A stretch of DNA of 64,000 bases. It comes from Chrysemys picta bellii (lineage: Eukaryota). The DNA lies in NCBI RefSeq assembly GCF_011386835.1, contig NC_088797.1:32860001-32924000 (forward strand). Direction: 5' to 3'. This document shows, piece by piece, positions 1 to 60,500 of the stretch. Numbering within the stretch: the first letter of the stretch is position 1; the number at the start of each line of letters is the position of its first letter. The notes under the pieces were generated by a model. It was not told the origin of the DNA, made no database searches, and was given only the letters and a program-made list of their open reading frames with translations. The position numbers and the translations under genes were made by a program.

Positions 1-423
1 TACTTCAGAGGGGCTGTAGTGATTAGAGTGGGGGAGCTGGGATTCAGGACTCCTGGGTTCAATGCCCAGTTCTGGGCAGGGAGTGGGAGTCAGGACTCCT
101 TGATTCTTTTGGTGGCTCTGAGGCAAAGTGTATTAGGCTGGTGACCCAGTGAAGATTTGTAAATAATCCTGGATAATTTAATATTAGATTTTGTAATATT
201 TATTAACAGAACCCCGGAATCCTGATGCCCAGCGCCCCTGCTATAACCACTAGCCCACCCTGCCTGTACACTCTGGGACCACCCCAGGTCGTTCCTTCAC
301 ATGCTGGGTGTCTGTGTTCCATTGGTGGGTTCAGGACATGTCCCCGGCCAGGGCTGTGTGTGTCTCTGTGCTGCAAGCTCCCTGCCCTGAGCTCTTAGTG
401 GTTCCCTCTCTGCAGAGCCCTCC

Positions 424-561
424 ATGGCTGAGATCATGATGAAGAAGGGGCTCCCCCTGGCTGGCCGGACCCTGGGGGAGTTCCCAATATCCCCTCTTCG
501 CTTTGTGTCAGCATCTGGGGGACGCCAGAGGAAACTGGACCGCTTCAGGAGAGGAGACAAG
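424..561 (+). CDS. COQ8A-like: COQ8A-like coding exon 1 ([10 protein letters not shown]...RRGDK); exon probably starts at 416
   Basis: Acceptor ccctctctgcag at 415, ATG at 424 with G at +4, donor AAG|gtacaa. Weakly resembles the COQ8A N-terminus (IMVAKGL) and is phase-compatible with the next exon. Confidence 0.6.
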
Positions 562-3500
562 GTACAAATGGGTCTGGCCAGAAGATTAGAATCATAGCAA
601 TGTAGGGCCGGAAGGAGTCTTGAGGGGTCATTAAGTCCAGCCCCCTGCGCTGAGGCAGGGCCAAGTAAACCCAGAGCATCCCTGACAGGTGTTTGTCCAA
701 CCTATTCTTAAAACCCTCCCATGACTGGGATTCCACAGCCTCCCCTGGCAGCCTGTTCCAGAGCTTAACTACCCTTAGAAAGTTTTTCTTAATATCTAAA
801 CTAAATCTCCCTTGCTGCAGATTAAGCCCATTCAGGGCCGGCTCTGGCTTTTTGGCAGCCCCAAGCAAAAAAAAAAAACAAACAAAAAATGGGGCGGCCA
901 GAACAGCAAAGCAAAAAAAAAAACAAAAAAACACCAGTGATCTGTGCGCCGGAGCACGGGTGCAGGGGGACCGGCTAGTGTGGGGGGGAAGGGAGCGGGC
1001 GGGAGAGAGAGAGAAGGGGGGCGGCCAGGGCTACAGCAGGGCGCTGCCACGCGACCCGTCCCGCCGCGCCGCGTGCCGCCTGCCGGGAGGGCTCCGCTCC
1101 GGTCGGCGGGGAGGGAAGGACGAGGACTGCCCTGCCTGGCTTGCTGCAGGGCGCTCCCGTCCTCCACGCCGCCGCCCCCTACAGGGCGGCCGGAGCGGAA
1201 ACAAAAAAAAGAAAAAAAAAACGGCCTGGCTGCCCTAGGATTGGGCGGAATGCCGCCTCGTTCAATCCGCCCCAAGCACCCGCTTGCTCAGCTGGTGCCT
1301 GGAGCCGGCCCTGAGCCCATTACTTCGTGTCCTGTCTCCAGTGGACACAGAGAACAATTGATCCCCGTACTCTTTATAACAGCCCTTTACATATTTGAAG
1401 TCTGTTATCATGTCCGATTCTCTGACGGGAGTGTGTGTATTGGGAATGGGATACGGGGCCTTTCCCCTCTAGGGGATGCCAGCTCCAATCTGGTCCCAGG
1501 ATGGGAGGACTGGATGACCCAAGGGGGCTAGGAATGGTGCCTGGGGCCTTTCCTCTCTAGGGGACACTGTTGCTGATCTGGCTATAGGGTGGGAGGGCAG
1601 GCTGGCTTGTGGGGGGAGGAGACTGGGACAAGGGGTACCAGACAGTATCCCAGCCCCCACCCATAAAGGGGTGATGTTTCTCCCCTTTCCCAGACTTGCA
1701 GCTCTGACTGGACCATTACGCCTGGGGTTATCCCAAAATCCTTTGCCAGTCCCAGACCTGCTCGCCCAGGGTGCTGGTCTTCTGTGCTGGGGCAAGGGGC
1801 TGGCTCTCTGCTCTGGACACCACAGCTGGACCATGTCCTGTCTCTCTTCCTGGTCCGCTCCATGGGCCCCTGGCGTTTGTACCATCAGAACTCTCCTGCA
1901 GTGGGCAGGCTGACAGCTGAAGACGTGCAAAAGGCCAGAGACACCAAGGTGCCACCCATCCGGCCCTACAGACATATGGTAAGGGGGTGGGTCTAGTGGT
2001 TAGGGCAGGGGTCTGGGAATCAGGGTACCTGGGCTCTATTCTCAATTCAGGGAGGGGAGGAATGTAGTGGTTAGAGCAGGGAGTCAGGACTCCTGGGTTC
2101 TATCCTCAGCTATGGGACAAATTTTAAATTAATGGAGATATCCCATCTCCTAGAACTGTAAGGGACCTTGAAAGGTCATCGAGTCCAGCCCCCTGCCTTC
2201 ACTAGCAGGACCAAGTACTGGTTTTGCCCCAGATCCCCAAGTGGCCCCCTCAAGGATTGAACTCACAACCCTGGGTTTAGCAGGCCAATGCTCAAACCAT
2301 TGAGCTATCCCTCCCCCAAGAGTGGGGTCTAGTGAGTTAGAGCAAGGGGGCTGGGAGACAGGACTCCTGGGTTTTATTTCTGTCTGAGACCAGGCAGTGG
2401 GTAGGAGTACACAGGGCTTTCTGCTCCCATGCTGCCATGGGGGGAGACAGGCGCTGTCTGGGAGAGTCACCTCTGCTCTGTTTTGCAGCTCAGTGACAAA
2501 TCTTGTGAGCGGAAGGTCCCTGCAACTCGGCTCGGCAGGCTGGCCAACTTTGGGGGTAAGAAGCATTCAGCACATGCCCTGATAAAGGAAAATCTTCCCT
2601 GCACAAGGGCCCCAGCTGACCCAGGGGACGGGACATGGGGCATTTCTCCTCTAGGGGGTCCCAGCTTCAATCTTCATTGTCAGAGGGGCCCAGCGTTGAA
2701 CAGGTCATGGAGGCTGAGTTGGCGGGGGATGGGTCCCTGTGGGGTCAGGAGAGGCAGCTCAGCACGGGGTGCTGTGTTGTGTATAGCACGAGCCCTGCTG
2801 CACCCGGTCTGGACAGACACACACAGAGGCTGGCAAGCTAGTCTCCAGGGGAACAGGAGACAGTAGATCAGGAAGGAAAGTGTTCCCAGGGGCCGTGTCA
2901 GCAGCTCCATGGGGTTTAAGGGGTGACTTGTTGGATGCTTTGTGGGGCGGGTGGCTCTGGAGGTCAGTGTGCGGGTGGCTTGGTACTCCCCTCCCCCAGT
3001 GGAGCAGTGAAGTAGGGCTGGTTGGCCTGGTGTGTTATTCCTCCACTCTGTCCCCTAGGCTTAGCCGTGAGTGTCGGGATCGGGGTCCTGGTGGAAGCTG
3101 CCAAGAAATCCTTCCGGGCAGAAACAGTTGTGAAAGGTGAGTGAAGGACACTGGTGGCAGCCCACTCACACACTTGGACAGGCACAATCAGAATCTCCCT
3201 TGCACGCTCAGACACACTGGTGGTCGGGTATGGACACAATCAGAATCCTTCTCACACATTCAGATATGGTCCTGGTCAAGTACAGAGATAACTGAAATCC
3301 CTCTCGCACACTCAGACACTCCTGTGGTCAGGTACAGACACAATTGGAACCCCCCTTGCACGCTCATTCACATGTACACATGTGGACACACATGTGCTCT
3401 TGTGAATACACCTGGGGCCCTTTTACACTAACAGTAGCAGTGTTGGAAGCTGCTTTGGGGGGAGGGGCTCAATGCACAAGTAATCACGCTTGGGCACCTG

Positions 3501-6500
3501 CATACGTAGAATCTCACACTCCCTGGCTCACATGCACGCTCAATGTCTTGCACTATTGGACACCCATCTCCATGGTGCACTGAGGCTGCCTGGAGACCCC
3601 TGCCCTGTGTGTGCGCAATGGGAGTGGGGCACATCTTTCCTGTGACCTCATTGTCTCCTGTGTGGATTGGGGGAGAACAGCAGGTCACAACCCAAGGGCT
3701 TGAACCCGTGGCGTGGGCTGGAGGGCAGGGCGCCAGCTGGGCCAAATGGCTGGTGTGATTCTAGCGCCAGAGGGAGCAGGGGATTTGGATGTGGCCACCA
3801 GGCAGGGCTGGGCCCCTTGCCAGCAGGATTTTTCCAGTGATGTGGGGGGCAGGGGCAGTACTAGTGCTGGCTGGTTGGAAAGTATTCATTGCAGGGGGGG
3901 AGGGTGAACAAATCGTTTTGTTTGGGCTTCAGAGCCTCTGGGAACGATTTGTCACTGGAAATGGAAGGACGTGTTAGATCAAAAAGTCGCTTCAAGTTGC
4001 AAAATTGCAACATTTTGTTTCAGCGCTGGCCCAGCCGGCCCCTGTGATTTCTCCTGAATTGTGCTGAAGGTTTGAAAAATGTCTTTAAACGAAAAAAGTG
4101 GCAAATCCACAGGCCTTTGGGAGAGGTTTGGGGGTCATGGAATTGCCGTTTGTCAGTGAAGTAACAGGTGGGGTGAAAAGGGTCACCCAGTGAACAACAT
4201 CCCTCCCTCCCCCCCGGAAGGGGGTACTTGGCTGCCAGATCTGTGATGCTGTGGTTGACAGGCAGGGATCCATGCTGTTGGTGGGGGTCTCCCCAGAGGT
4301 TATGGGGGGTTAGCTCTGACCTGACCACTCCTTTGCTCTCCCCCAACCCCCAGGTGAGCCGTCACCCTCGAGCTCAGGTGCCCTCCTGTCTGAAGCCAAT
4401 GCAGAGCGGATCGTCAGGACCCTGTGCAAGGTGCGGGGTGCGGCCCTGAAACTCGGCCAGATGCTGAGCATCCAAGGTGAGGAGGTGGGAGGATTGGGAG
4501 GGGGGCAGCCAACACCCCCAAATCCAGGGCAGGATCATTCCCTACAGCCTATTTGCCAGGGCTCCCTAGCACTGAACTCCACTGCGTCCCCCAAGTGTGG
4601 GGCTTGCTGCAGGGACAGTTCCCCAGCCAGACCCCCCTTCGCTCTGCCCAGTGTCACCCCACTGCTCCTTCCCTGCAGCCTGGTGTCATGAGGAGTGGCA
4701 TCCCCAATGTCACATCCCCCCCAGCGCAGCCTCTGATGCTCCCCCCTGCTTTGTACCCCCCAGATGACGCTCTTATTAACCCTGCGCTCCAGAAGATCTT
4801 TGAGAGGGTCAGGCACAGCGCCGACTTCATGCCCACTAAGCAAATGATGGTGAGTGGGGTGTGGGAGGGGACAGACTCGGAAGGTGGGAGGACTGGGGGG
4901 GGGGCCCATGGGAAGGTGGGGGGGCAAACCTGAGATGTGCGGGGGCAAGAGGTGGGGGTGGTTGGCACTGACCCTGCTATTCTCCCTTCTCCATGCAGGG
5001 GGTGCTGCACAGCGAACTGGGCCCAGACTGGCGCAGGCGGCTGGCCTGGTTCGAGGAGCGCCCCTTCGCTGCTGCTTCCATTGGGCAGGTGCATCTGGCA
5101 CAGCTGCTGGATGGGCGCAATGTGGCCATGAAAATCCAGGTATCAGCAGGGCTCAGGCGAGCCCAGATCCCCCTGCAGGCAGCCCGAACTCCCAGCAAGC
5201 AGAGCAGCGGCCATGTGGAGGCTGGTCTTCCTGGGTCGCTGGTGGCAGCCATGTTAGAGGCTGCTTCCCCTGGAGCACTGGGCAAAGGTGGCCATGTTGG
5301 AGGCCAGTTCCCCTGGTGCACTGGTGGCCATGTTGGAAGCTGGTTTCCCGGGGCACTGGGTGGCAGTGATTTCACCCCATCCAATTGGCCGCCATGTCCC
5401 AGTCTGGCCCTCTGTGGCTGATGCCTGTTTGCCCAAGGGGCTGATGGGAAAGGTCTTGGCTTTGGACTGAAGGAGCTTCCCTCACCCACCTGCCAGTGGC
5501 TACATTTAACTTCCCACTCTGGCTCCTTTGAGGACCTCGATACCCCCATGTGCCTCCTTTGGTTCATGACATCTGTGCCATGGGCAGGCCCTGTGGCCCC
5601 TGGGTCTGACTCCGTTTCCCTTTCCCCCAGTACCCAGGCATTGCCCAGAGCATCAACAGTGATGTCCGGAACCTCATCTCCCTACTGAGTCTGAGCAACG
5701 CGCTGCCTGAAGGTACCAGGTCCCAAGCCCAAGGGCCCACATTCCCCCCTGGGTGCTACCACGCCTTGCCCCCTCCTGGTCCCAAGAGAGCCCAAGCCCT
5801 CCTAAGCCTTCCCCCAAGAGTTGGGACCCTGGTGTCCTGGCCAAATCCCAACTCTTCTAATGACATTCTGCGAGCGTGGTGTGTGTGGGGACGGGGCTGG
5901 GAGCCAGGACTCCTGGGTTTCAAGCTTGACCATATGTGGCTTTGGGCAAGTCCCCTCCCCTCTGGGAGCCTCAGTTTCCCTGTCTCTGGAATGGGGATAG
6001 TGACAGAGGGTGTGACTCACTCTGGGCTCCTACGTGCTGGGCTGAGCTGAGTGCTGGCACTGATGTTCCTTCCTTGCTCGCTTCCCCGCAGGGCTTTTCC
6101 CTGAACATGCCATCGAGGTAATGAGCCGTGAGCTGGCCTTGGAGTGCGACTACAAGCGGGAGGCTGCCTGTGCCACGAGATTTCAGTAAGTGCCCATGTC
6201 AGTGTCACATCCACACTGGCCCAGTCGCCCAGGAGATGGTACAGTCAGCCATTCTGGCACACTTGCCTGGGGGCTGGTGTTGTCAGCCACACTGGCACAA
6301 TCACCTGGAAGAGTGGTACAGTTGGCCACTCCGGCACAGTTGCCCGGGAGATGGTACACACTGGCCCAACCGCCTGGTAAAGGGATGGTACAGGCAGCCG
6401 CTCTGGCACAGTCACCATGGAGATGGTACAGGCGACCACCCAGGCACAGTCCCCCAGTGTGTGTGTGTGTGTGTTGGGGGGGTTAGGCTGGTACAGAGCC

Positions 6501-9244
6501 CACACTGACAAAGCCTCTCCTGTTACGTTGCCCCCACAGGCAGCTGTTGCAGGGTGACCCGGTGTTCTATGTGCCGTCGGTGATCAGTGAGCTGAGCACC
6601 CAGCGGGTACTGACCACGGAGTTGGTGCCCGGCTTCCCCCTCGACCAGGCCCAGGGGCTGGACCAGGAGACACGCAACATGGTGAGGGGGGGGAAAGACA
6701 CTTGCATGCACACAGGATCCCACGTGCTGGGACACACTCCTAGTCTCTCTCTCACCCCCTCTTGGGATCTCCCTCTTGGATGCCCTCTGCTCACGCCTGC
6801 CTCAGGATCCTGCACCCGCAGACCCCGTTCCATGCCTGACCCTTTTCACCTTAACTCTGGGACGTGGAGCCAGTGCTGCTGCTATCGGAGGGGGGCAGTT
6901 CCCAGCCTGATCCTAGCGAGGGAGGGGGCCTGTCATGGGGAGGGGGAGAGCAGGGCTGGGGGCCATTGTGTTCAGTGCTGGGCTCTCTCTCGTCCCCACA
7001 GATCTGCTCCAGTATCCTGGATCTGTGCGTGCGGGAGCTCTTCCACTTCCGCTACATGCAGACCGACCCCAACTGGTCCAACTTCTTCTATGATCCACAC
7101 AGCGGCAAGGTACGGACACCTCCCGTTGCCCTCCATATCAGAGCCAGCCAGCAGCGAGCCCTTTCCCTGAAGGGGGAGACCCTCTACAGTCCCCCCATGT
7201 CAGAGCCAGCCAGCCACGACCCACTTCTCTGAATGGGGAAACCCCTACAGCCCCCCCATGTCAGAACCAGCCAGCCATGACCCCCCCTATTTGGAGTTTT
7301 TTTTAAAGGGGCTCCTATTACTCCCCCACCCCCGTCACAATTTTTCACACTTGCTGTCTGGTCACCCTACCCTTCCCTGAATGGGGGAGCCCCCTACTGC
7401 CCCCTGTGTTGCTGCAGTCCTCTTCCCAGCATAGAAAGAGACCCACCACCCCACACATCTGCCCCCTCCCCACTGCGCCTCTGTCTTTCCATGTCACAGT
7501 CTGCCAGCCATGCCCCCTCCCAATATGGGGGGATTCTCCCCTGCATCCTGTCTCCCTTCTACAAGCAGTGATCTACTACCCCCACCCCACATGTCCCCAC
7601 ACTATGCCCCTGCCCCCCATGCCACAGCCTGCCAACTGTGCCTGAATGGGCTGAGGCCCACCCTGCATGGCTGAGACCCCCACTCCCTCCCTCCCATCAG
7701 CTCCCCCTCCCCCAGCTGCACTCCTCACTATGAACCCCTCAACCATGTCCTACCACCCCGCCACGTGCCTAGCCCATGTACCCCATTCCAATCATGTGGG
7801 AGATATGGTCTGGATGCTCAGTGCCAACCTGCCCCACAAATGTAACACGTCCAACGGTACTGTCCCTAGGGCACAGCTTGGGGGCCTCCCCCTGACCACG
7901 GGCAGCTGCACTCCCCTCCCCCAGTAGTGTCACTCAGTTTGGGTCCAGGCAGCCCAACTCCTCCCCCGGCCAGCACTTAACAGTGTGATTTTTGGGGGAG
8001 GGTGGGCTGATCCCTCCCCAGCCCCCACAGCCCATCCCAGACCAGGGTTTCTCAGCTGATTCTGACCCACTCTTCCCTGTGTTGGACATCAGGTGGCGCT
8101 GCTGGATTTCGGAGCCACCCGCAGCTTTGACAAGGCCTTTACGGATCAGTACATTGAGGTGAGACTACTGCTGTCCAGCAGGGGGTGCTGCAGGGAGGAA
8201 GGCAGGAGCTCTGGCTGTTGGGGGGAGCCCCTGGCTACTCCAGCCCTGGCCTCTCCCAGCAGAAGGTACTATAGGGAGTGGGGCAGGAGTGTTTTGAGCC
8301 CTGTGCCCATCTCACAAGGCCTCTGGGCTGCTCTGCTAATGGTTCCAGATCATTAAGGCTGCGGCTGAGGGCGACCGGGCTGGGGTGCTGCAGGGATCCA
8401 TTGCGCTTCGGTTCCTCACGGGCTATGAGACTCAGGTGAGACCCTTGGGCCCCTCCCTGGCCACAGCATGGGGATTGGGGGGACCAGTGCCCAGATGATG
8501 GGGGGCAGAACCCTGCTCCCCCCAGCCATCTCCATGCCTCCAACCTCTGCCCAACTTCGCTGGCTCTCCTAGCCAGTTCCCTGCACCTACTCCTGTCTGC
8601 CTGTGTGCTCCCCTCGGTAACCTCTGTGCTCCCGGGTCCTGCCCACCTCCCCATACCTCTGCACCCTCAGCTCCCTCTGTCTCCCCTGCTACCTGACCCC
8701 ACCCTATGTCTCCCAGGCCCTGCTCACTGCCTCAGTCCCCTCTATGCCCCCCACCCTGTACTCTAACCCCCTCCATGCCCGCTTCGGTCCCGTCCACCAT
8801 GTTTCCCTCCAATCCCTGCCCACCCACTCAGCCCTCTCTGTGCCCCTCAGGTGCTCTCACACCACCCTGACCCCTCATGTCCCCCAAGCTCCCAGCCTAC
8901 CCCCCCATGCCCCACCTGCCCCCAGGCGTCCTGCCCTGGGCCTATCCTATGCTCCTCTCCCCCAGGCAATGAAGGATGCCCACGTAGACGCTGTGATGAT
9001 TCTGGGTGAGGCCTTTGCTGCCGACAGCCCCTTTGACTTTGGGGCCCAGAACACGACGCACCGCATCCACACCCTCCTGCCCATCATGCTGCAACACCGC
9101 CTGACACCGCCCCCTGAGGAGACCTACTCCCTCCACCGCAAGATGGCCGGCTCCTTCCTCATCTGTGCCCGGCTTGGTGCCCGCATCCCCTGCCGGCCCA
9201 TCTTCCGCCAGGCCTATGCCCGCTACTGGGGCCGGGAGGGCTGA
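424..9244 (+). CDS. COQ8A-like: COQ8A-like (ADCK3/UbiB-family) atypical mitochondrial kinase, full CDS: join(424-561,1694-1978,2489-2555,3059-3136,4354-4476,4764-4849,4999-5139,5631-5712,6092-6185,6540-6681,7002-7109,8093-8158,8349-8435,8966-9244) = 1776 nt, 591 aa
   Basis: Manually spliced. All introns are GT-AG, phases are consistent and there is no internal stop. KxGQ (ALKLGQ), A-rich loop ([11 protein letters not shown]), VAMKIQ lysine, TDPNWSNF catalytic loop and DFG are intact. Diagnostic residues ([46 protein letters not shown]) resemble COQ8A more than COQ8B. Confidence 0.92.
586..1412 (-). mobile_element. CR1 LINE 3' end fragment, interrupted by a MITE
   Basis: Minus-strand translation [25 protein letters not shown]...FKNRLDKHL is the CR1 ORF2 C-terminus, followed by the CR1 3' tail. 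The element resumes after 1321. Confidence 0.85.
833..1313. mobile_element. Non-autonomous hAT-type DNA transposon (MITE)
   Basis: TIR CAGGGCCGGCTC...GAGCCGGCCCTG; perfect 8-bp TSD AGCCCATT (825-832, 1314-1321). Confidence 0.9.
1694..1978 (+). CDS. COQ8A-like: COQ8A-like coding exon 2 (...[22 protein letters not shown]...RHM)
   Basis: Pyrimidine tract tttctcccctttcccag, 95 open codons, similarity to COQ8A HQDQSPVGGLTAEDIEKAR, donor ATG|gtaag. The 5' boundary is less certain than the 3'. Confidence 0.75.
2122..2317 (-). mobile_element. Tortoise Pol III SINE (tRNA-derived head + CR1-derived tail)
   Basis: Reverse strand reads GGGGGAGGGATAGCTCAATGGTTTGAGCATTGG...GAGTTCAATCC (A and B boxes), then the CR1-like tail GGACTCGATGACCTTTCAAGGTCCCTTACAGTTCT. 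Confidence 0.85.
2489..2555 (+). CDS. COQ8A-like: COQ8A-like exon 3 ([22 protein letters not shown])
   Basis: ttttgcag acceptor, gtaag donor, ERKVP..RLANFGG motif. Confidence 0.93.
3059..3136 (+). CDS. COQ8A-like: COQ8A-like exon 4 (TM helix [17 protein letters not shown])
   Basis: cccctag acceptor, gtgagt donor, homologous to COQ8 TM segment. Confidence 0.9.
3140..3400. repeat. Intronic minisatellite (~55-60 nt degenerate unit)
   Basis: Recurring cacactcagacac...ggtcaggta.agacacaat.ggaa.ccc. Confidence 0.7.
4354..4476 (+). CDS. COQ8A-like: COQ8A-like exon 5 ([29 protein letters not shown]; KxGQ motif)
   Basis: Direct translation; AG/GT boundaries. Confidence 0.95.
4764..4849 (+). CDS. COQ8A-like: COQ8A-like exon 6 ([29 protein letters not shown])
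   Basis: Direct translation; AG/GT boundaries. Confidence 0.95.
4999..5139 (+). CDS. COQ8A-like: COQ8A-like exon 7 (A-rich loop AAAS, VAMKIQ)
   Basis: Direct translation; AG/GT boundaries. Confidence 0.95.
5195..5410. repeat. Intronic minisatellite (~35 nt unit)
   Basis: Recurring ggccatgttggaggctgcttcccctggagcactgg. Confidence 0.75.
5631..5712 (+). CDS. COQ8A-like: COQ8A-like exon 8 ([15 protein letters not shown]...LPE)
   Basis: Direct translation; tttcccccag / gtacc. Confidence 0.95.
6092..6185 (+). CDS. COQ8A-like: COQ8A-like exon 9 ([27 protein letters not shown])
   Basis: Direct translation; cttccccgcag / gtaag. Confidence 0.95.
6195..6460. repeat. Intronic minisatellite (~39 nt unit)
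   Basis: Recurring ggagatggtacagtcagccactctggcacagtcacc. Confidence 0.8.
6540..6681 (+). CDS. COQ8A-like: COQ8A-like exon 10 ([11 protein letters not shown]...[14 protein letters not shown])
   Basis: Direct translation; cccccacag / gtgag. Confidence 0.95.
7002..7109 (+). CDS. COQ8A-like: COQ8A-like exon 11 (catalytic [13 protein letters not shown])
   Basis: Direct translation; AG/GT boundaries. Confidence 0.95.
7130..7410. repeat. Intronic minisatellite (~60 nt unit)
   Basis: Recurring tcagagccagccagc...gaatggggga.ccctacagcccccccatg. Confidence 0.65.
8093..8158 (+). CDS. COQ8A-like: COQ8A-like exon 12 ([10 protein letters not shown])
   Basis: DFG motif; AG/GT boundaries. Confidence 0.95.
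8349..8435 (+). CDS. COQ8A-like: COQ8A-like exon 13 ([10 protein letters not shown]...FLTGYETQ)
   Basis: Direct translation; AG/GT boundaries. Confidence 0.93.
8966..9244 (+). CDS. COQ8A-like: COQ8A-like last coding exon ([17 protein letters not shown]...[13 protein letters not shown]...YWGREG*)
   Basis: Direct translation ending in TGA at 9242-9244. Confidence 0.95.
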
Positions 9245-11175: not shown

Positions 11176-11288
11176 CTTTGCAGTACACACACACACACAC
11201 ACACACACCTACGTTTTGCACCCTGGGCTCTTCTTCACAGAGCAAAGAAACTCCTGAGTGACTTTCATCTCAGTTTAAAAAAAAAAAA

Positions 11289-12665
11289 ATGGAGAGAGGA
11301 TTACTAGAAGACCTGTGCCGAGGGGTACGAATCCCAGTAACCAAAGCTGTGCTGGTGGCGGGATTCCCAGAAGAGATGGAACCAAATGAAATTGAGGAGA
11401 GCCTAGATGCAGCTGAAATATTGGGGAGGGTAAAGGTCCACACCCATATTTACAACCGCAAAGTGAAGAGCATGGTAGCACTATGTACTCACTCCAAGGA
11501 AGCAGATCTTGATAAAGTGCCCAAAGAGATGCAAGTAGAAGGTATTCCCTGGACAATTCTGGGGGCAGAGCAGTCCCCTCCTAGTGTGCCTGTGTCACTT
11601 GAGGTGGATTCTTTAGCGCAGAAATTGCAAGCTCTGATGGTGGGTGAGAAGCGGACAAGAGAATAATTAATTTTGGCATTAGGAGGGGCTCCAACACCTG
11701 CAGCACCCAGCCTGGTGGGATGGGCCAAAGAGCTGGGAAACGCTCTCAAAAATGCATTGAAGCCGGTATATGAAAGTGCTCCATACGAGCGGTTACGTTC
11801 ATTCTCGGGGGTGTCACCTGTACCCCCAGGAGAGGAGGATTACGAGATCTGGAGGGATTTTACAGTGCCACTTGTCCAAGAGTGGGAATGCTCTGATGCT
11901 GAGAAGCGGAAACGTGTGCTTGAGAGTCTGAGGGGACCTGCCATGTGAATTATCTGAGCCCTGAAAGACTCACAACCAGCTGCCACAGTGCAAGACTATT
12001 TAACCGCTCTTGAGAATGTCTACAGTACTACTGATAGCAGTGAAGACCTGTATTATCGTTTCTGCCATACCTATCAGGAGCCCCACGAACGATTGTTGGA
12101 TTTCATCAGGAGACTAGAGGATTTGCTACAGCAGGTAGTGCGGAAGGAGGGCATCCCCACCAAGCGCATTGATTCTGCTAGGTTGGACCAAATCCTTTGG
12201 GGCACCCGACAAGATAGGTTGATGTGGCGCCTGCAGCTGAGGGAGCGGGCCCAAAACCCACTCCCATTCCACAAGCTCATTCGAGAGATACGTGAAGAGG
12301 AGGAGCGATTGTTGCAAGTGGATGCAATGGTGCAGCCGAAGATGGCAGGGAGTCGCACCACCACAGTGCTTGGAGAGATGGAAGATGCCCCGTCAGTGGC
12401 AGCAGCACTGAGAGATTTGACCCGAGAAGTGGTCATGATGAAGGCTCAGGGACATACTGTGCCATCCTCAAGAGGGGAGAGTAGCAGGAAGGGTGATAGC
12501 CAGCAAGAAGGTTTCTGTTATAACTGTGGAAGAGATGGTCACTGTGCCTTGGACTGCCAAAACAAGACAGATCATGCAAGGGTATCTCAGAGATTGCAGC
12601 AGACCATTAGGAAGCTTCAGGGAAACACCAACAGGGCTTGGGGAAGGAGCAACGCAAGACCCTGA
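11289..12665 (+). pseudogene. PNMA/Ma-like retrotransposon gag (N-terminal PNMA domain, capsid, CX2CX4HX4C knuckle) with 3 in-frame stops and no frameshifts
   Basis: ORFs 11289-11666, 11673-11948 and 11988-12665 share one frame. Stops are TAA 11664, TGA 11946 and TGA 11955. Motifs LRSFSG..PGEEDYEIW, EKRKRVLESLRGPA and CYNCGRDGHCALDC are typical of PNMA/Gypsy gag. Confidence 0.88.
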
Positions 12666-17250: not shown

Positions 17251-19269
17251 AGATTTGCTGCCCCCTCTCTGCTGCCCCCATGTGAATTAATTTGTCTTAT
17301 CAGAATCTCTGTGTTTCTTCCTCTATTTCCCTACCCAGCCTGGCCCATGTTCCTGTGTGCCCCTGTGTCCCCTCCCTGGCGCTGGGTCCTGTCCCGACCA
17401 TCGCCCAAGGGTGTGGGATCCAGGCACAGTTTATGAAGGAGAAAGGTCTGGTTTATTTCTTTGCTCCTTTCCACACTTCTGGCCCGGGAGTTATTGGTTC
17501 ATGGGGAACAAGGCTAAACCACCCACCCACTGGGAACTCCTCCCTAGAGATTAACTGGGTATGGAAGCCCCCCACACCACTCCCTACAGCACAGCGCCCC
17601 CTAGTGCCGCACTGGGGCACTGGCTGTGTGGGAAAGTGCCCCCACCCTGCTCCCTGCAGCACCAGGAACTTTTTCTATCTTGCTCCCTGCTGAGATCCAG
17701 TTAGGTCATTTGGGGTCTGGTGCAATTAATAAAATCCTTAAATCTTTTTCAGAGTCCCTCCCCCCCTGTACATTTCCTTGAAACCCTGGACCTTTAGGCA
17801 TCCAGCCCACAATCTGTCAGAGATCTTGGGTCCCACTGGATCAGAGTCCTTTTATTATGGCTCCTTATCAAGGAGTTGCCTTTAACAGCACTTGGCACCC
17901 CAGATGCCAAGGGGCGAAGTTCAGCTCCCGGCCTGGGTGCTGCAGGCAGTGCAGATCATAAAGCAAGCAGGCTTCATTGCTTTATTGCCCCACATGCCTT
18001 ATCGCCCCAGCTTCCTTATTGCCGGGGAGCTGGGCTAACGATCCCATGGATGGTGAACTTGTGACTCTGTGCCAGTTTCCGGGTGGCTCAGTGGGGAGAT
18101 CTCTCCTCTCCCTGCCAATGCCCCAGTGCAGCACTAGGGGGCTCTTTGCGGCAGTGAACAGGGTGGGGGGCTCAGAGGGAGCGCTCTCCCCTTGCAGCCA
18201 GTGCTGCCCTCAATGTCCCAATGCCATACTAGGGGTGGCTGTGCTGCAGTGAATGGGTTGGAGGGCCATTAGGGGGCACTCTCCCCTCACAGTCAGTGCT
18301 GATTTAACACAGTCTGGGCACATTGTAATTTGGGTAACTCCATTCTGCATCCTTTATTCATTTTTCAGCAAATCTACTTCTCTTCCTGTCCTAAATGTTT
18401 GTGCAGCTGCATCTCAGCGCCGGGTGAGGGATCCCAGTGTAATCAGCCTTTGCATCCCACTGCAGACAGCTACATCTCAGCACCGTACAAGGGCTCCCTG
18501 AATAAACAATTTCCATTTAGCTGGTGTTACAACTTCCAGATTTCTGACCAGAAGTTTGAAACCACCAAAGAAAAGACTGTCCTACTGTGAACCAGTCCCT
18601 GGGTTTGTATTGAGTCCAGTGCTTGCTGGGACAGGATTCTGGAGTACTGTGTAGGTACATATGTAGTGCAGACATGATCAAGGCTTGTGGCTGTGTATCT
18701 CACTAGCAAGTCACAATGTCTTGATTTAATTTACTCCTAGTAATTTAGCCCAGAGATGGCTGCATCTCAGTGCTGAGGAGCACGCTCTGGTATGCTTTGG
18801 GATGCCCTAGAAATATTAGTATGATTTATTATTAGGCTAATATCAGAAGGAGGGAGAAACAACTCAGGAAAGGAGAAAAGACAAAGCCGTATCTGCTCCT
18901 GTGTTTGTATGGCACCTCGCATGTCAGGGGCAATTCCTGGCTGGTCCCAAAGCACTTCCATGATAAACATGAAGATAAATCAATAAATAATGCTCATAAT
19001 TGGTACTGGTTTCCTTATTCCTTCAGGTGCCCAATTCAGGATCCCCTGTCCCTGGCAGGTGACTATCTCCATCCCCACCTGAGTCTGGCACACAGCTATC
19101 ACCTCCTGCCAGCGATGGACTTGTCAAGCATCACCTGGAGAAATGCTTCCCCTCGAACTCGGATCCCGGAGTGCAGGAAGCCCCCATTGCACATGATCCC
19201 CTGGGGCTGGAAGTGACAGACCCTGCAACACACACCGCCTAGTGGGAGACTGCCCCCTGCTGGAAGGTG

Positions 19270-19352
19270 ATGCCTATTGGATGTAACAGCAACTCCATGT
19301 GGAAGGTTTCATCCCTTTTCCAGTGGGGCTGCTGTTATTTTTGATAGGCTGT
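19270..19352 (+). ncRNA. MIR194-2: pre-miR-194 (mir-194-2 type); mature 5p 19282-19303
   Basis: Exact TGTAACAGCAACTCCATGTGGA. 3' arm CCAGTGGGGCTGCTGTTAT is of the 194-2 type. Basal stem gcctattgga/tttgataggc. Confidence 0.95.
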
Positions 19353-20159: not shown

Positions 20160-20250
20160 CCCAGTGCACAGGACTATGACCTATGAATTGACAGCCAGTC
20201 CTTCTGCCGCGCCCTGGCTGTCAGTTCTGTAGGGCACAGGTATGTTCACC
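20160..20250 (+). ncRNA. MIR192: pre-miR-192; mature 5p 20176-20196 (ATGACCTATGAATTGACAGCC)
   Basis: Mature sequence of the miR-192/215 family. Flanks agtgcacagg and cacaggtatgttc match the recalled human mir-192 hairpin. Complementary arm ctggctgtcagttctgtagg. Lies downstream of mir-194. Confidence 0.93.
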
Positions 20251-20659
20251 TCCATGACCTCGGCATGGCGACGGGCGGGTGTGCCAGGATGCGAGGGGTT
20301 ACGTGAGGCTGGGGTGGGAAGGATGGGGGATGATGGGGTGGACGGAGAAGACCTGAGGAGGGGAAATAAACTGGATTCCCAGCAAAGACGTGTGAGGCTC
20401 CTTATTGGCTCTACAATCGGTTGCGGAGGCTGGCAGGAGCTTTTCACCAGCATCTTCCGGGCACCACAAGGTTAATGGTATAGCAGGAGTCCCTGATACC
20501 AGACCCCTACCTCATTAGCTGCACACTCTGGGGGATGGGGAGCGGGCGCCAAGCTCTGAGCCCCTGGGGGAGCTCATATTGGAACATAAGCATCAACACC
20601 CATCCCAGGACCACAGCTACCTGCCCCAGCCTGGAACCCCTCCATCCTGAGGGCTGGTG

Positions 20660-21115
20660 CCAGGCTGAGGGGTGTGCCAGGAGCTATGGGTCAGGCCAGG
20701 CTTGGTGGGAGTGTGTGCTAGGAAGTACAGGCGAAGCCAAGCCTGGGAGGGGTGTGTGCCAGGAGGTCTGGGTCAGGCCAGGCCTGGGGTGGGGGGTGTG
20801 CCAGGGGTTTTGAGACAGGCCAGGCTGGGAGGCGGGGGGTGCCAGGAGGTCTGGGTCAGGCCATGCGGTCTGGGTCAGACCAGGCTGGAAGGAGGTGTGT
20901 GCCAGGAGGTCTGGGTCAGGCAAGGCGTATGTGTGCGTGCGCCAGGAGGTCTGGATCAGGCCAGGCCTGGGGTGGGGGGTGTGCCAGGAGTTTTGAGTCA
21001 GGCCAGGCTGGGAGGGGATGTGTGCCAGGAAGTCTGGGTCAGGCCATGCGGTCTGGGTCAGAACAGGCTGGAAGGGGGTGTGTTCCAGGAGGTCTGGGTC
21101 AGGCCGGGCTGGGTG
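20660..21115. repeat. G-rich ~40-nt tandem repeat
   Basis: Recurring gtgtgccaggaggtctgggtcaggccaggc(c)tgggg. Confidence 0.85.
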
Positions 21116-21807
21116 TGTGTGCTAGCTATGCCTCCGGCCAGGCTGCTGCTTGGAGGGTTTCCAGTCCCCCCCCCCCCCAGTCATGATAATCCGGTTCCCT
21201 CTGCTAGTGAATAGAGTACACAAAGCCCTCCCTGCAGTAACCAACTGTATCCACCAGGAGGCGCGCTAAACCCGCTTTTGGACAAAGAGCTGAGGTTAGA
21301 ACCCAGGCCAGGAGTCCTGACTCTCAGGTGCCCCTTCTCCCGCTCTGACTCACTAGACCCCACTCCCCTCACAGAGCTGGGAATAGAACCCAGGAATCCT
21401 GCTGTAAGCAGTGGGGAAGGCTCCCTCCCAGGTGACACAAAGGGGACATGTGGCCCCCGCCCAGGCTGGAGTTTAGCTGCCCCCCCAGGCGTGGCTGGTG
21501 CTTCCTGGGATGGGAGGGTTCCCTGGCCAGCACCCCTCCCCATGGTCAGCGGAGGCTGTCTGGGCTAGGCACGGGGAGAAGGATATGAGCTCATGGGGTG
21601 TTGGCTGCTCTCTTCTGCCAGCTGCTTTGCAGTGAGCTCAGCACTGGGCTATGACAGGCCACGGCTCCGGGGATGGGAGTGGCGAGGGGTTTCATATGAT
21701 GGGAGGAAGGGGCTGGGGCTGGGGCTGCAGCTGCTCAGAGGCTAATACACATGGCTTCCTCCTTTGGACTCCAGCCATGCTAGGGAGTGGGGCCTAGTGG
21801 GATAGAG

Positions 21808-57500: not shown

Positions 57501-60500
57501 TGCTGGTTGATCCTGGGACAAGACACTTTCCTCCCTTCCAGGTCAGATTTGCAGAAATGGGGGGAGGGGTGGGCCTTGTGCAGGCAGAGGTTGCCTTCTG
57601 CAGCATGGGTCATCTGCTGGTATCACTAGGTGTCTCACTGCAGCAATTCCCTGCCATTGCAGGGGCCTCTGGCATTGACAGCCCTTTGGTTTCCTCTTGT
57701 TTGAAATGCTTTGGTTTAACTCAATTGTTCGGTTTGGTATAGGGGTATCTGGTGAAACTGAATCTCCTAATAGAGAGGAGACCAGACTAGATGATATGAT
57801 CATCCCTTCTGGCCTTAAACTTTCCCTTACCTTTAAATCAGGGGTAATGAGATCTTTCTGAAGATCTTTGAGATCTAAGCTTGGGAAAATAGTGTATGGA
57901 GAGCTCAGCATCAACACTTCGCCCGTCTAATCCTGTGGCATGTGTTGGGGTTCTGGAACATTCAGTTTCCTGGATGTAATATAGCTTGCACTGACTGGTA
58001 GTAGTTCATCTGATCCTGTTGTGCTAGGTGGTGGGCACGATTCAGTCCCTGATCCAAAGTGTGCAATCTAATAGAGAGCTTCCAATCAGTCATCTGAGGC
58101 AGTTTGTGTAGTGCATAGCCATGGAACAGAAGTGGTGTTGGCGTTGGGGCTCCTAGGTGCTACCACAACACAAATGAGTAAGACCAAGATGTGAGAGGAA
58201 ACTGAGGCATGGGGGGCAATGATTTGTCAGGGTTAGTGACAGGACTGGGAGTGTAGACCCAGGGTCTCCAGAGTCCCAAGTTGATGCTCTCCTCTCAGGC
58301 TGCCGCCTTATCTGCAGTCCTTGTGTAAAAACATCCCTCTCTCTTGCAGGCTATGACTTTGCAGCGGTACTGGAGTGGTTCGCAGAGCGTGTGGACCGTA
58401 TTATCCTCCTCTTCGATGCTCACAAGCTGGACATCTCAGATGAGTTTTCAGAGGTGATCAAGGCCCTGAAGAACCATGAGGACAAGATCCGGGTGGTGCT
58501 GAACAAAGCAGACCAGATTGAGACACAACAGCTGATGCGGGTCTATGGTGCCCTCATGTGGTCACTGGGGAAGATCATAAACACCCCAGAGGTGGTGCGG
58601 GTCTACATTGGCTCCTTCTGGTCCCAGCCACTCCTCATCCCTGAGAACAGGAAGCTCTTTGAAGCAGAAGAGCAGGATCTCTTCAAAGATATCCAGTCCC
58701 TGCCCAGGAATGCTGCACTCCGCAAGCTCAATGACCTCATCAAGAGAGCCAGGCTCGCCAAGGTATGGTGTCCCAAGCATTCCCTCTGTGAGTCAGACAC
58801 TGCTACATGGGTGGGATTTGGTCTTCTCTGAACAAGGGTGATACTTGACTAGCATTAATGTAGCCTTTCAGAGTTCCCCTGACCAAGTGCAGGGATGTGC
58901 CAGATGTCTGCAGGCACCTCTTCTCTCCCCCCCCCCCCCATTGAGATTAGAGTCCCTAGCAAAGATGGGGGAGGGGGAGACATTACACTATTCACTGCAG
59001 AGAGCCCTAATGAGACCATAACTGCTCCAGAGAGCTCAGCCTGGATATCCACAGGGTGGGAGGAGACACCAAGAAGGGTAGGGGCTCACTCAAGGTTGCA
59101 TAGCAGTTTCCCAGTAGACCTGGGAATAGCAACCACCAGTGCTGTCTCCAGTTCCCTGCTCTAACCCACTAGACCACATGTCCCCCCAGAGCTGGAAGAG
59201 AACCTAGGAGTAGACTCCCAATCCATGTTTCCACTGCTTTCGCTGTCAATACAACCCCCTAATGTAGATGCTGCACTGGTGCAGATAGTATCTGGCATTT
59301 AGTGCAAGCTCCTAGTACAAGAACAGCCATGGTTCCAATCCAAGAGTAGGTGAGGCATAGCTTGTACTGCCTGCTAACCTGCAGTGGCTTGTTCTCACCA
59401 CTCCATTCAAACTAATGGCACACTAGTCCCAGAAGTATGGGTTTTGTGATAAGATCAAATAGGGAAATTCTGGGTTCTATTTCTGGCTCTGCCACAGCCT
59501 ACTAACTGACAGCTGCATTTTACAGCAGGGAAACCCCTCAGATTAACGTCCCTTGCTGGAGAGTTTTGAGTCAGTTTTGGGAAAGATTATGGAAATTTCT
59601 GAGCCATGCTGAGGAAATTCCACCTTAAATCCCACCTTAAACTCTTTACCTTACAATGGACTCTGCACTGTTCTGGGCATTATCTCTTGAAGGCATCACT
59701 CTTGCAGATAAGCTATTTGCTTGCAGATAAGCCTAGCTAGCTAAACAAAACCTGGGTGGAGAAGTGCAGCTCTTTATGGGAACACAGCTGTTTTATGGCT
59801 CTGTTTTCAGTTTCTCTTTGAACTGGCTGGAAGGAGCTGTAAAAACCTTGATTGCTTCAGAGAAATCATAGGGCTTATTTCTGACCCATGTCAATGCTAG
59901 CTCCTGGACCCAGAGCTGGCACCAGGCTTCTCCAAGATCCAAACTGCTGCTTGATTTCAGCCTTCTAAAATCAGTGCAATTTCAAACCGTAACTCTGATT
60001 AGTTTAACAGATCAAATTCTTGTTCTGGGTCCATAACTGTAGTACTTAAAACATGCTGTAACTTAATATAAGTCAGCAGAGATGTATAGGAACATAAATG
60101 GAAGGGACCACCTGGGTCATGGCTCTCCAGTCCCTGCTATTGTGGGCAGCTGTAGTCCCATCCTGGTCAAACTGATCCAGCTCCAAACTAGTTAGGTTGT
60201 CTGATCCCTACTATTCCTACTGGGAGGCTGTTCCAGAATCTCCTTCCTTATTTCCAGCCTCAGTGGATTCCTGGTCAGTTTCTGTTCTTTGTTCTTGTGC
60301 CAATATTGTCTTTGAGCTTCTATAGCTCTTCCCTCCCTGGGGTTTACCACCAAATGTATTTAGAGAGAGCAATCAGATCCCCTCTTAGCCTTTGTTTTTC
60401 AAAAGCTAAACAAGCACAGCTTTCAGTCTCCTCCTTTTTGTAAGATCTGCTCTTCATTCCCCTGATCAGCCTAAGAGCCCTCCTCTGCATCTGGTCCCGT

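What the first reader, a model, noticed from the sequence alone, without database searches (positions are those of the whole stretch)
424..9244. Intact third COQ8 paralog at the miR-194-2/192-EHD1 locus, apparently absent from mammals
Seen: a complete 14-exon, 591-aa COQ8 kinase with KxGQ, AAAS, catalytic Lys, TDPN and DFG intact, directly upstream of mir-194-2, mir-192 and EHD1. Established (recalled): mammals have two COQ8 genes, COQ8A at 1q42 beside CDC42BPA (MIR194-1/215 at 1q41) and COQ8B at 19q13 (near DMPK and EHD2). Human 11q13 (ATG2A-MIR194-2-MIR192-EHD1-CDC42BPG) has none. Inference: this is a whole-genome-duplication ohnolog of COQ8A kept in turtles and lost in mammals, i.e. an uncharacterised extra component of coenzyme Q biosynthesis with a shorter, divergent N-terminus.
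Basis: partly seen in the sequence, partly recalled or inferred. Interest (0 to 1): 0.82.

Follow-up and report, generated by a model that had tools for sequence, protein, structure and literature searches.

The report
Third COQ8 gene in turtles
This turtle carries an intact, expressed and conserved extra copy of the coenzyme-Q helper gene COQ8, an ancient sister of COQ8A also found in caecilians and bichirs but in no annotated mammal, bird, lizard, frog or teleost protein that the searches returned.

Summary
Window 424-9244 (+) holds a 14-exon, 591-aa COQ8-type (UbiB/ABC1) gene. It is 98.8% identical to NCBI's Terrapene protein "COQ8A, mitochondrial-like". mir-194, mir-192 and an EHD gene follow it.

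- **Expression and constraint:** spliced transcript contigs reproduce the first seven exon junctions exactly. The kinase-like core has dN/dS 0.06-0.13 between turtles. It keeps 139 of 142 residues that are invariant in all other COQ8 proteins compared.
- **Phylogeny:** an ML tree gives (COQ8B,(COQ8A, clade C)). Clade C holds turtles, three caecilians and two polypterids.
- **Separate COQ8A:** these lineages also have an ordinary COQ8A. In the turtle Emydura it lies beside a CDC42BP/MRCK kinase gene.
- **Rejected by AU tests:** a turtle-specific duplicate, lineage-specific duplicates, and grouping with COQ8B.
- **Teleosts:** the two teleost "COQ8A" genes are teleost duplicates of COQ8A, not members of clade C.
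- **Timing:** the duplication predates the split of ray-finned and lobe-finned fishes. An origin before sharks (2R) is favoured (bootstrap 95-99) but not significant (AU p 0.05-0.07).

The gene is auto-annotated, and the papers I searched describe only two paralogues. COQ8B in turtles, true absence elsewhere and biochemical function were not tested. Interest is moderate.

The parts
416..561 (+). First coding exon of the COQ8-like gene. The CDS starts at the ATG at 424, and a splice acceptor AG lies at 414-415.
   Evidence: The RNA contig joint 561/1694 and the contig start at 414 are.
1694..1978 (+). Coding exon 2, the poorly conserved N-terminal region up to [11 protein letters not shown]...PYRHM.
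   Evidence: joints 561/1694 and 1978/2489. dN/dS over the N-terminal region (codons 1-141) is 0.6-0.9.
2489..2555 (+). Coding exon 3 ([22 protein letters not shown]).
3059..3136 (+). Coding exon 4, the hydrophobic [17 protein letters not shown] segment.
4354..4476 (+). Coding exon 5, containing the KxGQ motif ([11 protein letters not shown]). The acceptor at 4354 is used, not the in-frame alternative at 4378.
   Evidence: The RNA joint 3136/4354 is.
4764..4849 (+). Coding exon 6.
4999..5139 (+). Coding exon 7, with the A-rich loop [11 protein letters not shown] and the catalytic Lys in VAMKIQ.
5631..5712 (+). Coding exon 8.
   Evidence: The joint 5139/5631 is.
6092..6185 (+). Coding exon 9 (ELALECDY).
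   Evidence: The exon structure reproduces the NCBI proteins of Dermochelys and Pelodiscus.
6540..6681 (+). Coding exon 10.
7002..7109 (+). Coding exon 11, the catalytic loop [10 protein letters not shown].
8093..8158 (+). Coding exon 12 (LLDFGA, the DFG motif).
8349..8435 (+). Coding exon 13.
8966..9244 (+). Coding exon 14, including the stop codon.
   Evidence: This exon was the query.
19268..19351 (+). mir-194 precursor.
   Evidence: Rfam RF00257, 70.7 bits. The same order is seen in Dermochelys and Pelodiscus.
20168..20245 (+). mir-192 precursor.
   Evidence: Rfam RF00130, 74.3 bits. The same order is seen in the two other turtles.
35385..35876 (+). Open segment holding the first coding exon of an EHD-family gene ([18 protein letters not shown]...). 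It is EHD1-like by recollection of the human sequences. Further exons lie near 39687-39980 and 58223-58828.

Best explanation
The locus is a functional third member of the vertebrate COQ8 family, here called clade C. It is the sister paralog of COQ8A.

**Origin.** It arose by an ancient block duplication before ray-finned and lobe-finned fishes split. The most likely cause is the second vertebrate whole-genome duplication. In turtles it sits in the EHD1 / mir-194 / mir-192 region. Turtles, caecilians and polypterids kept it. It was apparently lost in mammals, archosaurs, lepidosaurs, frogs and most ray-finned fishes.

**Mechanism (inferred).** It probably works like COQ8A and COQ8B. That means a mitochondrial, membrane-anchored UbiB-type atypical kinase or ATPase whose ATP hydrolysis supports the coenzyme-Q biosynthetic complex. 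It carries its own divergent, shorter N-terminal region, and its expression probably differs from that of the other two.

**Shown:** gene structure, transcription and splicing, purifying selection, retained catalytic and invariant residues, phylogenetic position, and a separate COQ8A in turtles.

**Inferred:** mitochondrial import, ATPase activity, a role in CoQ synthesis, the 2R mechanism, and the losses.
For: **Structure.** The gene has 14 exons and encodes 591 aa, matching NCBI turtle models. CDS projection reproduces the Dermochelys and Pelodiscus proteins exactly.

**Expression.** Spliced contigs carry seven exact GT..AG joints.

**Constraint.**
- Core dN/dS is 0.06-0.13 against Dermochelys and Pelodiscus.
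- The turtle protein keeps 139 of 142 columns that are invariant in COQ8A, COQ8B and invertebrate COQ8.
- It aligns without gaps across the kinase-like core to solved COQ8A and COQ8B structures (9tvn, 9tvk, 4ped).
- Pfam ABC1 is present.

**Phylogeny.** Careful ML trees give clade C 100/99, A+C 100/98, and COQ8A including sharks 99/91 and 95/93. Within C and within A the branching follows the species tree.

**AU tests.**
- Turtle C with turtle A: p=2.7e-5.
- C with COQ8B: p=0.005.
- Polypterid C with polypterid A: p=4.6e-6.
- Caecilian C with caecilian A: p=3.6e-5.

**Both genes in one genome.** This holds for Pelusios, Rhinatrema, Geotrypetes, Microcaecilia, Polypterus and Erpetoichthys.

**Synteny.**
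- COQ8A lies tail-to-tail with a long MRCK kinase gene in Emydura and in the chimaera.
- Polypterus C lies tail-to-tail with a different-sized (1485-aa) MRCK gene.
- Turtle C is followed by mir-194, mir-192 and an EHD gene.
Against: - Clade C has a long stem, so long-branch effects could push it too deep. Placing the duplication after the shark split is only borderline rejected (AU p=0.049 and 0.073).
- No chondrichthyan member of clade C was seen.
- The Polypterus locus has no mir-192/194 within 10 kb, and its local gene order differs from the turtle's.
- I could not show that its MRCK neighbour is CDC42BPG (one search was uninformative).
- Absence in other lineages rests on annotated proteins in top-120 lists.
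- The N-terminal 141 codons evolve almost neutrally (dN/dS 0.6-0.9).
- Mitochondrial targeting was not tested.
- There is no biochemical or genetic evidence of function.
- COQ8B in turtles was not checked.
Confidence: 0.72

Rival explanations
1. The paralog is ancient, but it comes from a segmental (block) duplication in the bony-vertebrate stem after the split from cartilaginous fishes. It is not a product of the 2R whole-genome duplication.
For: The AU test does not clearly reject C plus bony-vertebrate COQ8A as one clade with sharks outside (p=0.049, p=0.073). No shark, ray or chimaera member of clade C appeared in the searches. The long stem of clade C could be pulled artificially deep.
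Against: The best trees put chondrichthyan COQ8A with bony-vertebrate COQ8A at 99/91 and 95/93. The gene lies in the EHD1/mir-192/194 region. By established knowledge (recalled, not tested here) that region is a 2R paralogon of the COQ8A/CDC42BPA/mir-194-1/215 region. Polypterus C has its own MRCK neighbour, which fits duplication of a large block.
Confidence: 0.2
2. It is simply the COQ8B ortholog sitting in a non-mammalian position. This was my first guess, from motif resemblance.
For: A few short motifs resemble the human COQ8B sequence as I recalled it at the start. The core is 65-67% identical to eel and gecko COQ8B.
Against: COQ8B of frogs, teleosts, gecko and cuckoo forms a separate clade, and A+C has 100/98 support. 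Forcing C with B is rejected (AU p=0.005). The score against the ancestral COQ8A structure sequence is higher than against COQ8B (777 vs 728 bits).
Confidence: 0.02
3. It is the turtle COQ8A ortholog moved to a new place, or a recent turtle-specific duplicate of COQ8A.
For: NCBI names it 'COQ8A' or 'COQ8A-like'.
Against: Turtle COQ8A proteins of 648-651 aa exist (Emydura, Pelusios). They nest with other amniote COQ8A. In Emydura the gene lies beside a CDC42BP/MRCK gene. Turtle C with turtle A as one clade is rejected (p=2.7e-5). Orthologs occur in caecilians and polypterids.
Confidence: 0.01
4. It is a transcribed but functionless relic on its way to being lost.
For: The gene has been lost in most vertebrate lineages. 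The N-terminal third evolves nearly neutrally. The clade has long branches.
Against: The 591-codon frame is intact in at least six turtle genera in five families, all cryptodires, and a partial 536-aa protein is on record for the pleurodire Pelusios. Core dN/dS is 0.06-0.13. All catalytic motifs and 139 of 142 universally invariant residues are kept. Splicing is correct.
Confidence: 0.03

Closest known systems
COQ8A (ADCK3), the vertebrate atypical kinase/ATPase of coenzyme Q biosynthesis
   Same: Same fold family and domain order. The alignment to solved COQ8A runs gap-free over the kinase-like core. The KxGQ motif, A-rich loop, catalytic Lys, ExD, catalytic loop and DFG are the same. It is the closest paralog in the tree (A+C 100/98). 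The exon count is similar.
   Different: It forms a separate clade that excludes all COQ8A, including the turtles' own. It lies beside mir-194/192 and an EHD gene rather than CDC42BPA. It is shorter, 591 aa against about 650 aa, with an unrelated-looking and fast-evolving N-terminal region. There are a few clade-specific changes at otherwise invariant sites: L169V/I, K499Q and Q248H.
COQ8B (ADCK4)
   Same: Same family and motifs, and about 65% identity in the core. Its N-terminus is also shorter than that of COQ8A.
   Different: It belongs to a different clade. Grouping with COQ8B is rejected (AU p=0.005).
The two teleost genes annotated 'COQ8A': a ~595-aa type and a ~620-663-aa type (ZFIN's coq8aa/coq8ab, by recollection)
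   Same: They too are extra COQ8A-like copies that NCBI annotates as 'COQ8A'. The ~595-aa type is the best single-sequence match to the turtle core, at 72%.
   Different: The two teleost types are sisters of each other inside ray-finned-fish COQ8A, so they are teleost-specific duplicates. They are not orthologs of the turtle gene.

Membership tests
UbiB / ABC1 atypical kinase-like family (Pfam PF03109) | An ABC1 domain above Pfam's curated cut-off. | tested here: met
   232.8 bits against a cut-off of 22.9, on the Terrapene protein that is 98.8% identical to the window's product.
COQ8 subfamily (COQ8A/COQ8B/yeast Coq8 type) | The KxGQ motif in the N-terminal extension, an Ala-rich (AAAS) loop in place of the Gly-rich loop, the catalytic Lys, ExD, a QTDPNWSN catalytic loop and DFG. 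| tested here: met
   All of these can be read in the translation. They are aligned to solved COQ8A and COQ8B. 139 of 142 family-invariant columns are kept.
COQ8A orthologs | Nests inside the COQ8A clade with the species' other amniote relatives. | tested here: not met
   It forms a separate clade (100/99). Turtle COQ8A is elsewhere in the tree. The AU test gives p=2.7e-5.
COQ8A orthologs | Lies tail-to-tail with CDC42BPA. | tested here: not met
   The window has mir-194, mir-192 and an EHD gene downstream. The Emydura and chimaera COQ8A genes do have the MRCK neighbour.
COQ8B orthologs | Groups with COQ8B of other vertebrates. | tested here: not met
   COQ8B forms its own clade. Forcing C with B gives AU p=0.005.
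2R ohnolog of COQ8A | The duplication node is older than the split of cartilaginous and bony vertebrates. | tested here: inconclusive
   It is favoured by the best trees (99/91 and 95/93), but AU gives p=0.049 and 0.073.
2R ohnolog of COQ8A | Lies in a chromosomal block paralogous to the COQ8A block. | tested here: inconclusive
   Turtle C lies beside the mir-194/192 pair and an EHD gene. Polypterus C lies beside its own MRCK kinase, as COQ8A does. The identity of that kinase and the wider synteny could not be examined.
Coenzyme Q biosynthesis accessory factor | Mitochondrial matrix-side localisation, and ATPase activity needed for CoQ production. | not testable with these tools
   This is only inferred from conserved residues and purifying selection.

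The most novel reading that the evidence does not exclude
Clade C is a true 2R ohnolog that acquired a specialised job distinct from COQ8A and COQ8B. One example would be supporting coenzyme Q supply in particular tissues or physiological states. That could explain why three unrelated lineages (turtles, caecilians, bichirs) kept it under strong constraint for over 400 million years while others lost it.
Probability: 0.15. Interest if true: 0.6.

Novelty: new member of a known kind. Interest (0 to 1): 0.45.

Why it matters
Work on coenzyme Q biosynthesis treats vertebrates as having two COQ8 paralogues, including work that reconstructs 'tetrapod ancestral' COQ8A and COQ8B (PMC7615680; bioRxiv 10.64898/2026.02.03.703536).

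This locus shows that the bony-vertebrate ancestor, and hence the tetrapod ancestor, had a third. Some living tetrapods still use it. That has three consequences:
- It changes the expected ancestral gene set.
- It offers a natural third sequence for studying what distinguishes COQ8A from COQ8B, namely the N-terminal region and a few clade-specific substitutions.
- It is a clean example of ohnolog loss in several separate lineages.

It also corrects database naming. These genes are labelled 'COQ8A' or 'COQ8A-like', which can mislead orthology-based analyses. No new mechanism is implied, so the interest is moderate.

Tried and rejected
1. My first guess from recalled human motifs was 'COQ8B ortholog'. 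The tree and the AU test rejected it.
2. I expected the ~595-aa teleost 'COQ8A' to be the ortholog, because it was the best hit at 72%. The tree shows it is a teleost duplicate inside COQ8A.
3. Profile queries built from a flatworm scaffold plus all turtle exons were misaligned by MAFFT. Only seven cleanly placed exons were used (A5).
4. Rhinatrema C locus: no DNA was served, and no neighbour lies within 10 kb.
5. Polypterus COQ8A (P0430) was not on record for a locus look-up.
6. I compared the 3' ends of the MRCK neighbours in the Polypterus C, Emydura A and chimaera A loci by tblastx. There were no matches, so this was uninformative.
7. The scan's notes for COQ8, CDC42BPA, CDC42BPG and ATG2A in this genome held nothing useful on a second COQ8 gene.
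8. I could not name the organism of SRA run SRR6291290, which yields a basal clade-C transcript (P0435). Neighbouring run numbers are amphibian and fish meta-transcriptomes.
9. No structure prediction was run, because solved COQ8A/COQ8B structures align end to end.
Full report
**1. What is in the sequence**

The window is GC-rich vertebrate DNA. Open segments on the + strand between 424 and 9244 carry unmistakable COQ8-type peptides. I placed 14 coding exons with canonical GT..AG borders:

| Exon | Coordinates |
|---|---|
| 1 | 424-561 |
| 2 | 1694-1978 |
| 3 | 2489-2555 |
| 4 | 3059-3136 |
| 5 | 4354-4476 |
| 6 | 4764-4849 |
| 7 | 4999-5139 |
| 8 | 5631-5712 |
| 9 | 6092-6185 |
| 10 | 6540-6681 |
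| 11 | 7002-7109 |
| 12 | 8093-8158 |
| 13 | 8349-8435 |
| 14 | 8966-9244 |

- They join into a 1776-nt frame encoding 591 aa.
- The product is 98.8% identical, without gaps, to NCBI's 591-aa 'atypical kinase COQ8A, mitochondrial-like' of Terrapene.
- It is 96% identical to those of Dermochelys and Chelonia, 95% to Pangshura, and 89% to Pelodiscus and Carettochelys.
- The window therefore comes from a turtle close to the emydids.
- Projecting the same exons onto the Dermochelys and Pelodiscus loci reproduces their NCBI proteins exactly.

**2. It is transcribed and spliced as modelled**

Contigs assembled from two public runs of the same organism lie on the window as spliced pieces. One is a 980-nt contig with no mismatch. 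The joints are 561/1694, 1978/2489, 2555/3059, 3136/4354, 4476/4764, 4849/4999 and 5139/5631, all GT..AG.

- This settles the ambiguous exon-5 acceptor: 4354 is used, not 4378.
- It also supports the two N-terminal exons.
- The contigs stop matching at 414, right after a polypyrimidine tract and an AG. An upstream, probably non-coding, exon therefore exists. I did not locate it.

**3. Surroundings**

- Rfam finds mir-194 at 19268-19351 and mir-192 at 20168-20245 on the same strand.
- The same order, gene then mir-194 then mir-192, holds in Dermochelys and Pelodiscus.
- From about 35.4 kb an EHD-family gene begins. Pfam finds EHD_N and Dynamin_N, and the N-terminus is EHD1-like by recollection.
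- Between the COQ8-like stop codon and mir-194 lies a PNMA-type gag reading frame in three in-frame pieces separated by stops. An earlier scan note describes it separately.

**4. Is it functional?**

- Pairwise dN/dS for the kinase-like core (codons 142-591) is 0.06 against Dermochelys and 0.13 against Pelodiscus. For the N-terminal 141 codons it is 0.6-0.9.
- All COQ8 hallmark motifs are present.
- The near-identical Terrapene protein aligns end to end with solved structures. These are the reconstructed tetrapod COQ8A (9tvn, 777 bits), COQ8B (9tvk, 728 bits) and human COQ8A (4ped).
- 142 alignment columns are invariant in every COQ8A, COQ8B and invertebrate COQ8 compared. The turtle protein keeps 139 of them. 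The changes are L169V, Q248H and K499Q, and the first is shared by the whole clade.

A relic would not look like this.

**5. What kind of COQ8 is it?**

A search with the last exon found teleost, eel, rabbit and gecko relatives. A profile of cleanly placed turtle exons on a flatworm scaffold then pulled out the turtle orthologs. A profile of turtle, caecilian, bichir and ray proteins brought in ordinary COQ8A from many vertebrates.

Careful ML trees (LG+C20+F+G4 PMSF) give (COQ8B,(COQ8A, C)):

- Clade C (100/99) holds the window's gene and other turtles, three caecilians (Rhinatrema, Geotrypetes, Microcaecilia) and both polypterids (Polypterus, Erpetoichthys).
- A+C has 100/98 support.
- COQ8A (99/91 and 95/93) includes sharks, rays, chimaera, lungfish, amphibians, amniotes and ray-finned fishes in species-tree order.
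- Turtle COQ8A (Emydura 651 aa, Pelusios 648 aa) nests with the other amniotes.
- Caecilians and polypterids each have both genes, on different chromosomes or scaffolds.
- The two teleost 'COQ8A' types are sisters within ray-finned-fish COQ8A, so they are teleost duplicates and not members of C.

AU tests:

| Grouping forced | p-AU |
|---|---|
| Turtle C with turtle A | 2.7e-5 |
| C with COQ8B | 0.005 |
| Polypterid C with polypterid A | 4.6e-6 |
| Caecilian C with caecilian A | 3.6e-5 |

**6. Timing and mechanism of the duplication**

The duplication is older than the split of ray-finned and lobe-finned fishes. Whether it is older than the shark split is favoured by the best trees. It is not secured: forcing C with bony-vertebrate COQ8A, sharks outside, costs only about 7 log-likelihood units (AU p=0.049 and 0.073). 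Clade C also has a long stem.

Synteny fits a block duplication:

- COQ8A lies tail-to-tail with a long MRCK/CDC42BP kinase gene in a turtle (1849 aa) and in the chimaera (1906 aa).
- Polypterus C lies tail-to-tail with another MRCK gene of 1485 aa.
- In turtles, C lies with mir-194/192 and an EHD gene.
- In human, the mir-194-2/192-EHD1-CDC42BPG block (11q13) is regarded as paralogous to the COQ8A-CDC42BPA and mir-194-1/215 region (1q41-42). This is recalled knowledge that I could not test here.

I could not name the Polypterus kinase or see neighbours of the caecilian gene.

An unlabelled transcript from SRA run SRR6291290 (P0435, 638 aa) branches at the base of clade C (100/99). Its organism is unknown. 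Neighbouring run numbers are amphibian and fish meta-transcriptomes. If it proved to be a cartilaginous fish, it would settle the 2R question.

**7. Distribution**

In both profile searches, no crocodilian, bird, squamate, tuatara, mammal, frog, named salamander, lungfish, sturgeon, gar or teleost protein scored as a clade-C member. Their COQ8A proteins were listed, except for mammals, which appear only as two COQ8A fragments. This points to several independent losses. It rests on annotated proteins and top-120 lists, not on genome searches.

**8. How it most likely works**

By inference, it works as COQ8A and COQ8B do. The basis is the retained residues, the hydrophobic segment [17 protein letters not shown], and a basic N-terminus that is conserved at its very start among turtles. 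The proposed steps are import into mitochondria, anchoring at the inner membrane, and ATP hydrolysis that supports the CoQ biosynthetic complex. That role is described in PMC7615680 and bioRxiv 10.64898/2026.02.03.703536. None of this was tested here.

**9. Novelty**

The gene is auto-annotated, as 'COQ8A-like' or 'COQ8A'. The papers I could search speak of two paralogues only. A search for COQ8C, COQ8A-like, coq8aa and coq8ab found no description of a third ancient paralog.

I rate it a new member of a known kind, with moderate interest.

Noticed in passing
window 11262-12662 (+): A PNMA-type gag reading frame (Pfam PNMA_N and PNMA) lies between the COQ8-like stop codon and mir-194. It is in three pieces, all in one frame, separated by stop codons (11262-11663, 11667-11945, 11958-12662). 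As it stands it is interrupted. Whether it lies in the COQ8-like 3' UTR was not tested.
   Followed up: partly
window 2000-2400 and 5800-5999: Transcript-contig depth is very high here (tens of thousands), with many chimeric joints between about 2100 and about 5890. This looks like two copies of a highly expressed interspersed repeat in introns 2 and 8 of the COQ8-like gene.
   Followed up: no
window 414-423: RNA contigs stop matching at 414, just after ctctctgcAG. The first coding exon is therefore preceded by an unlocated 5' exon, so the gene starts upstream of the finding's coordinates and possibly outside the window.
   Followed up: partly
L006 (Logan contig of SRA run SRR6291290), 41-1957: A complete 638-aa COQ8 transcript of unknown organism branches at the base of clade C (100/99). 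It shares the clade's changes at positions 169 and 248. It may extend the distribution of the paralog to another lineage.
   Followed up: partly
window 20480-21220 (+/-): Just downstream of mir-192 there is a GC-rich stretch with long open frames in several frames on both strands, and a visibly repeated peptide pattern (GVCQEVWVRPG...). This suggests a tandem repeat.
   Followed up: no
Terrapene Ensembl/UniProt model P0312 (672 aa): An alternative database model of the same turtle gene has a different, longer N-terminus that reads through what is intron 1 in the RNA-supported model. It is probably an annotation artefact.
   Followed up: partly
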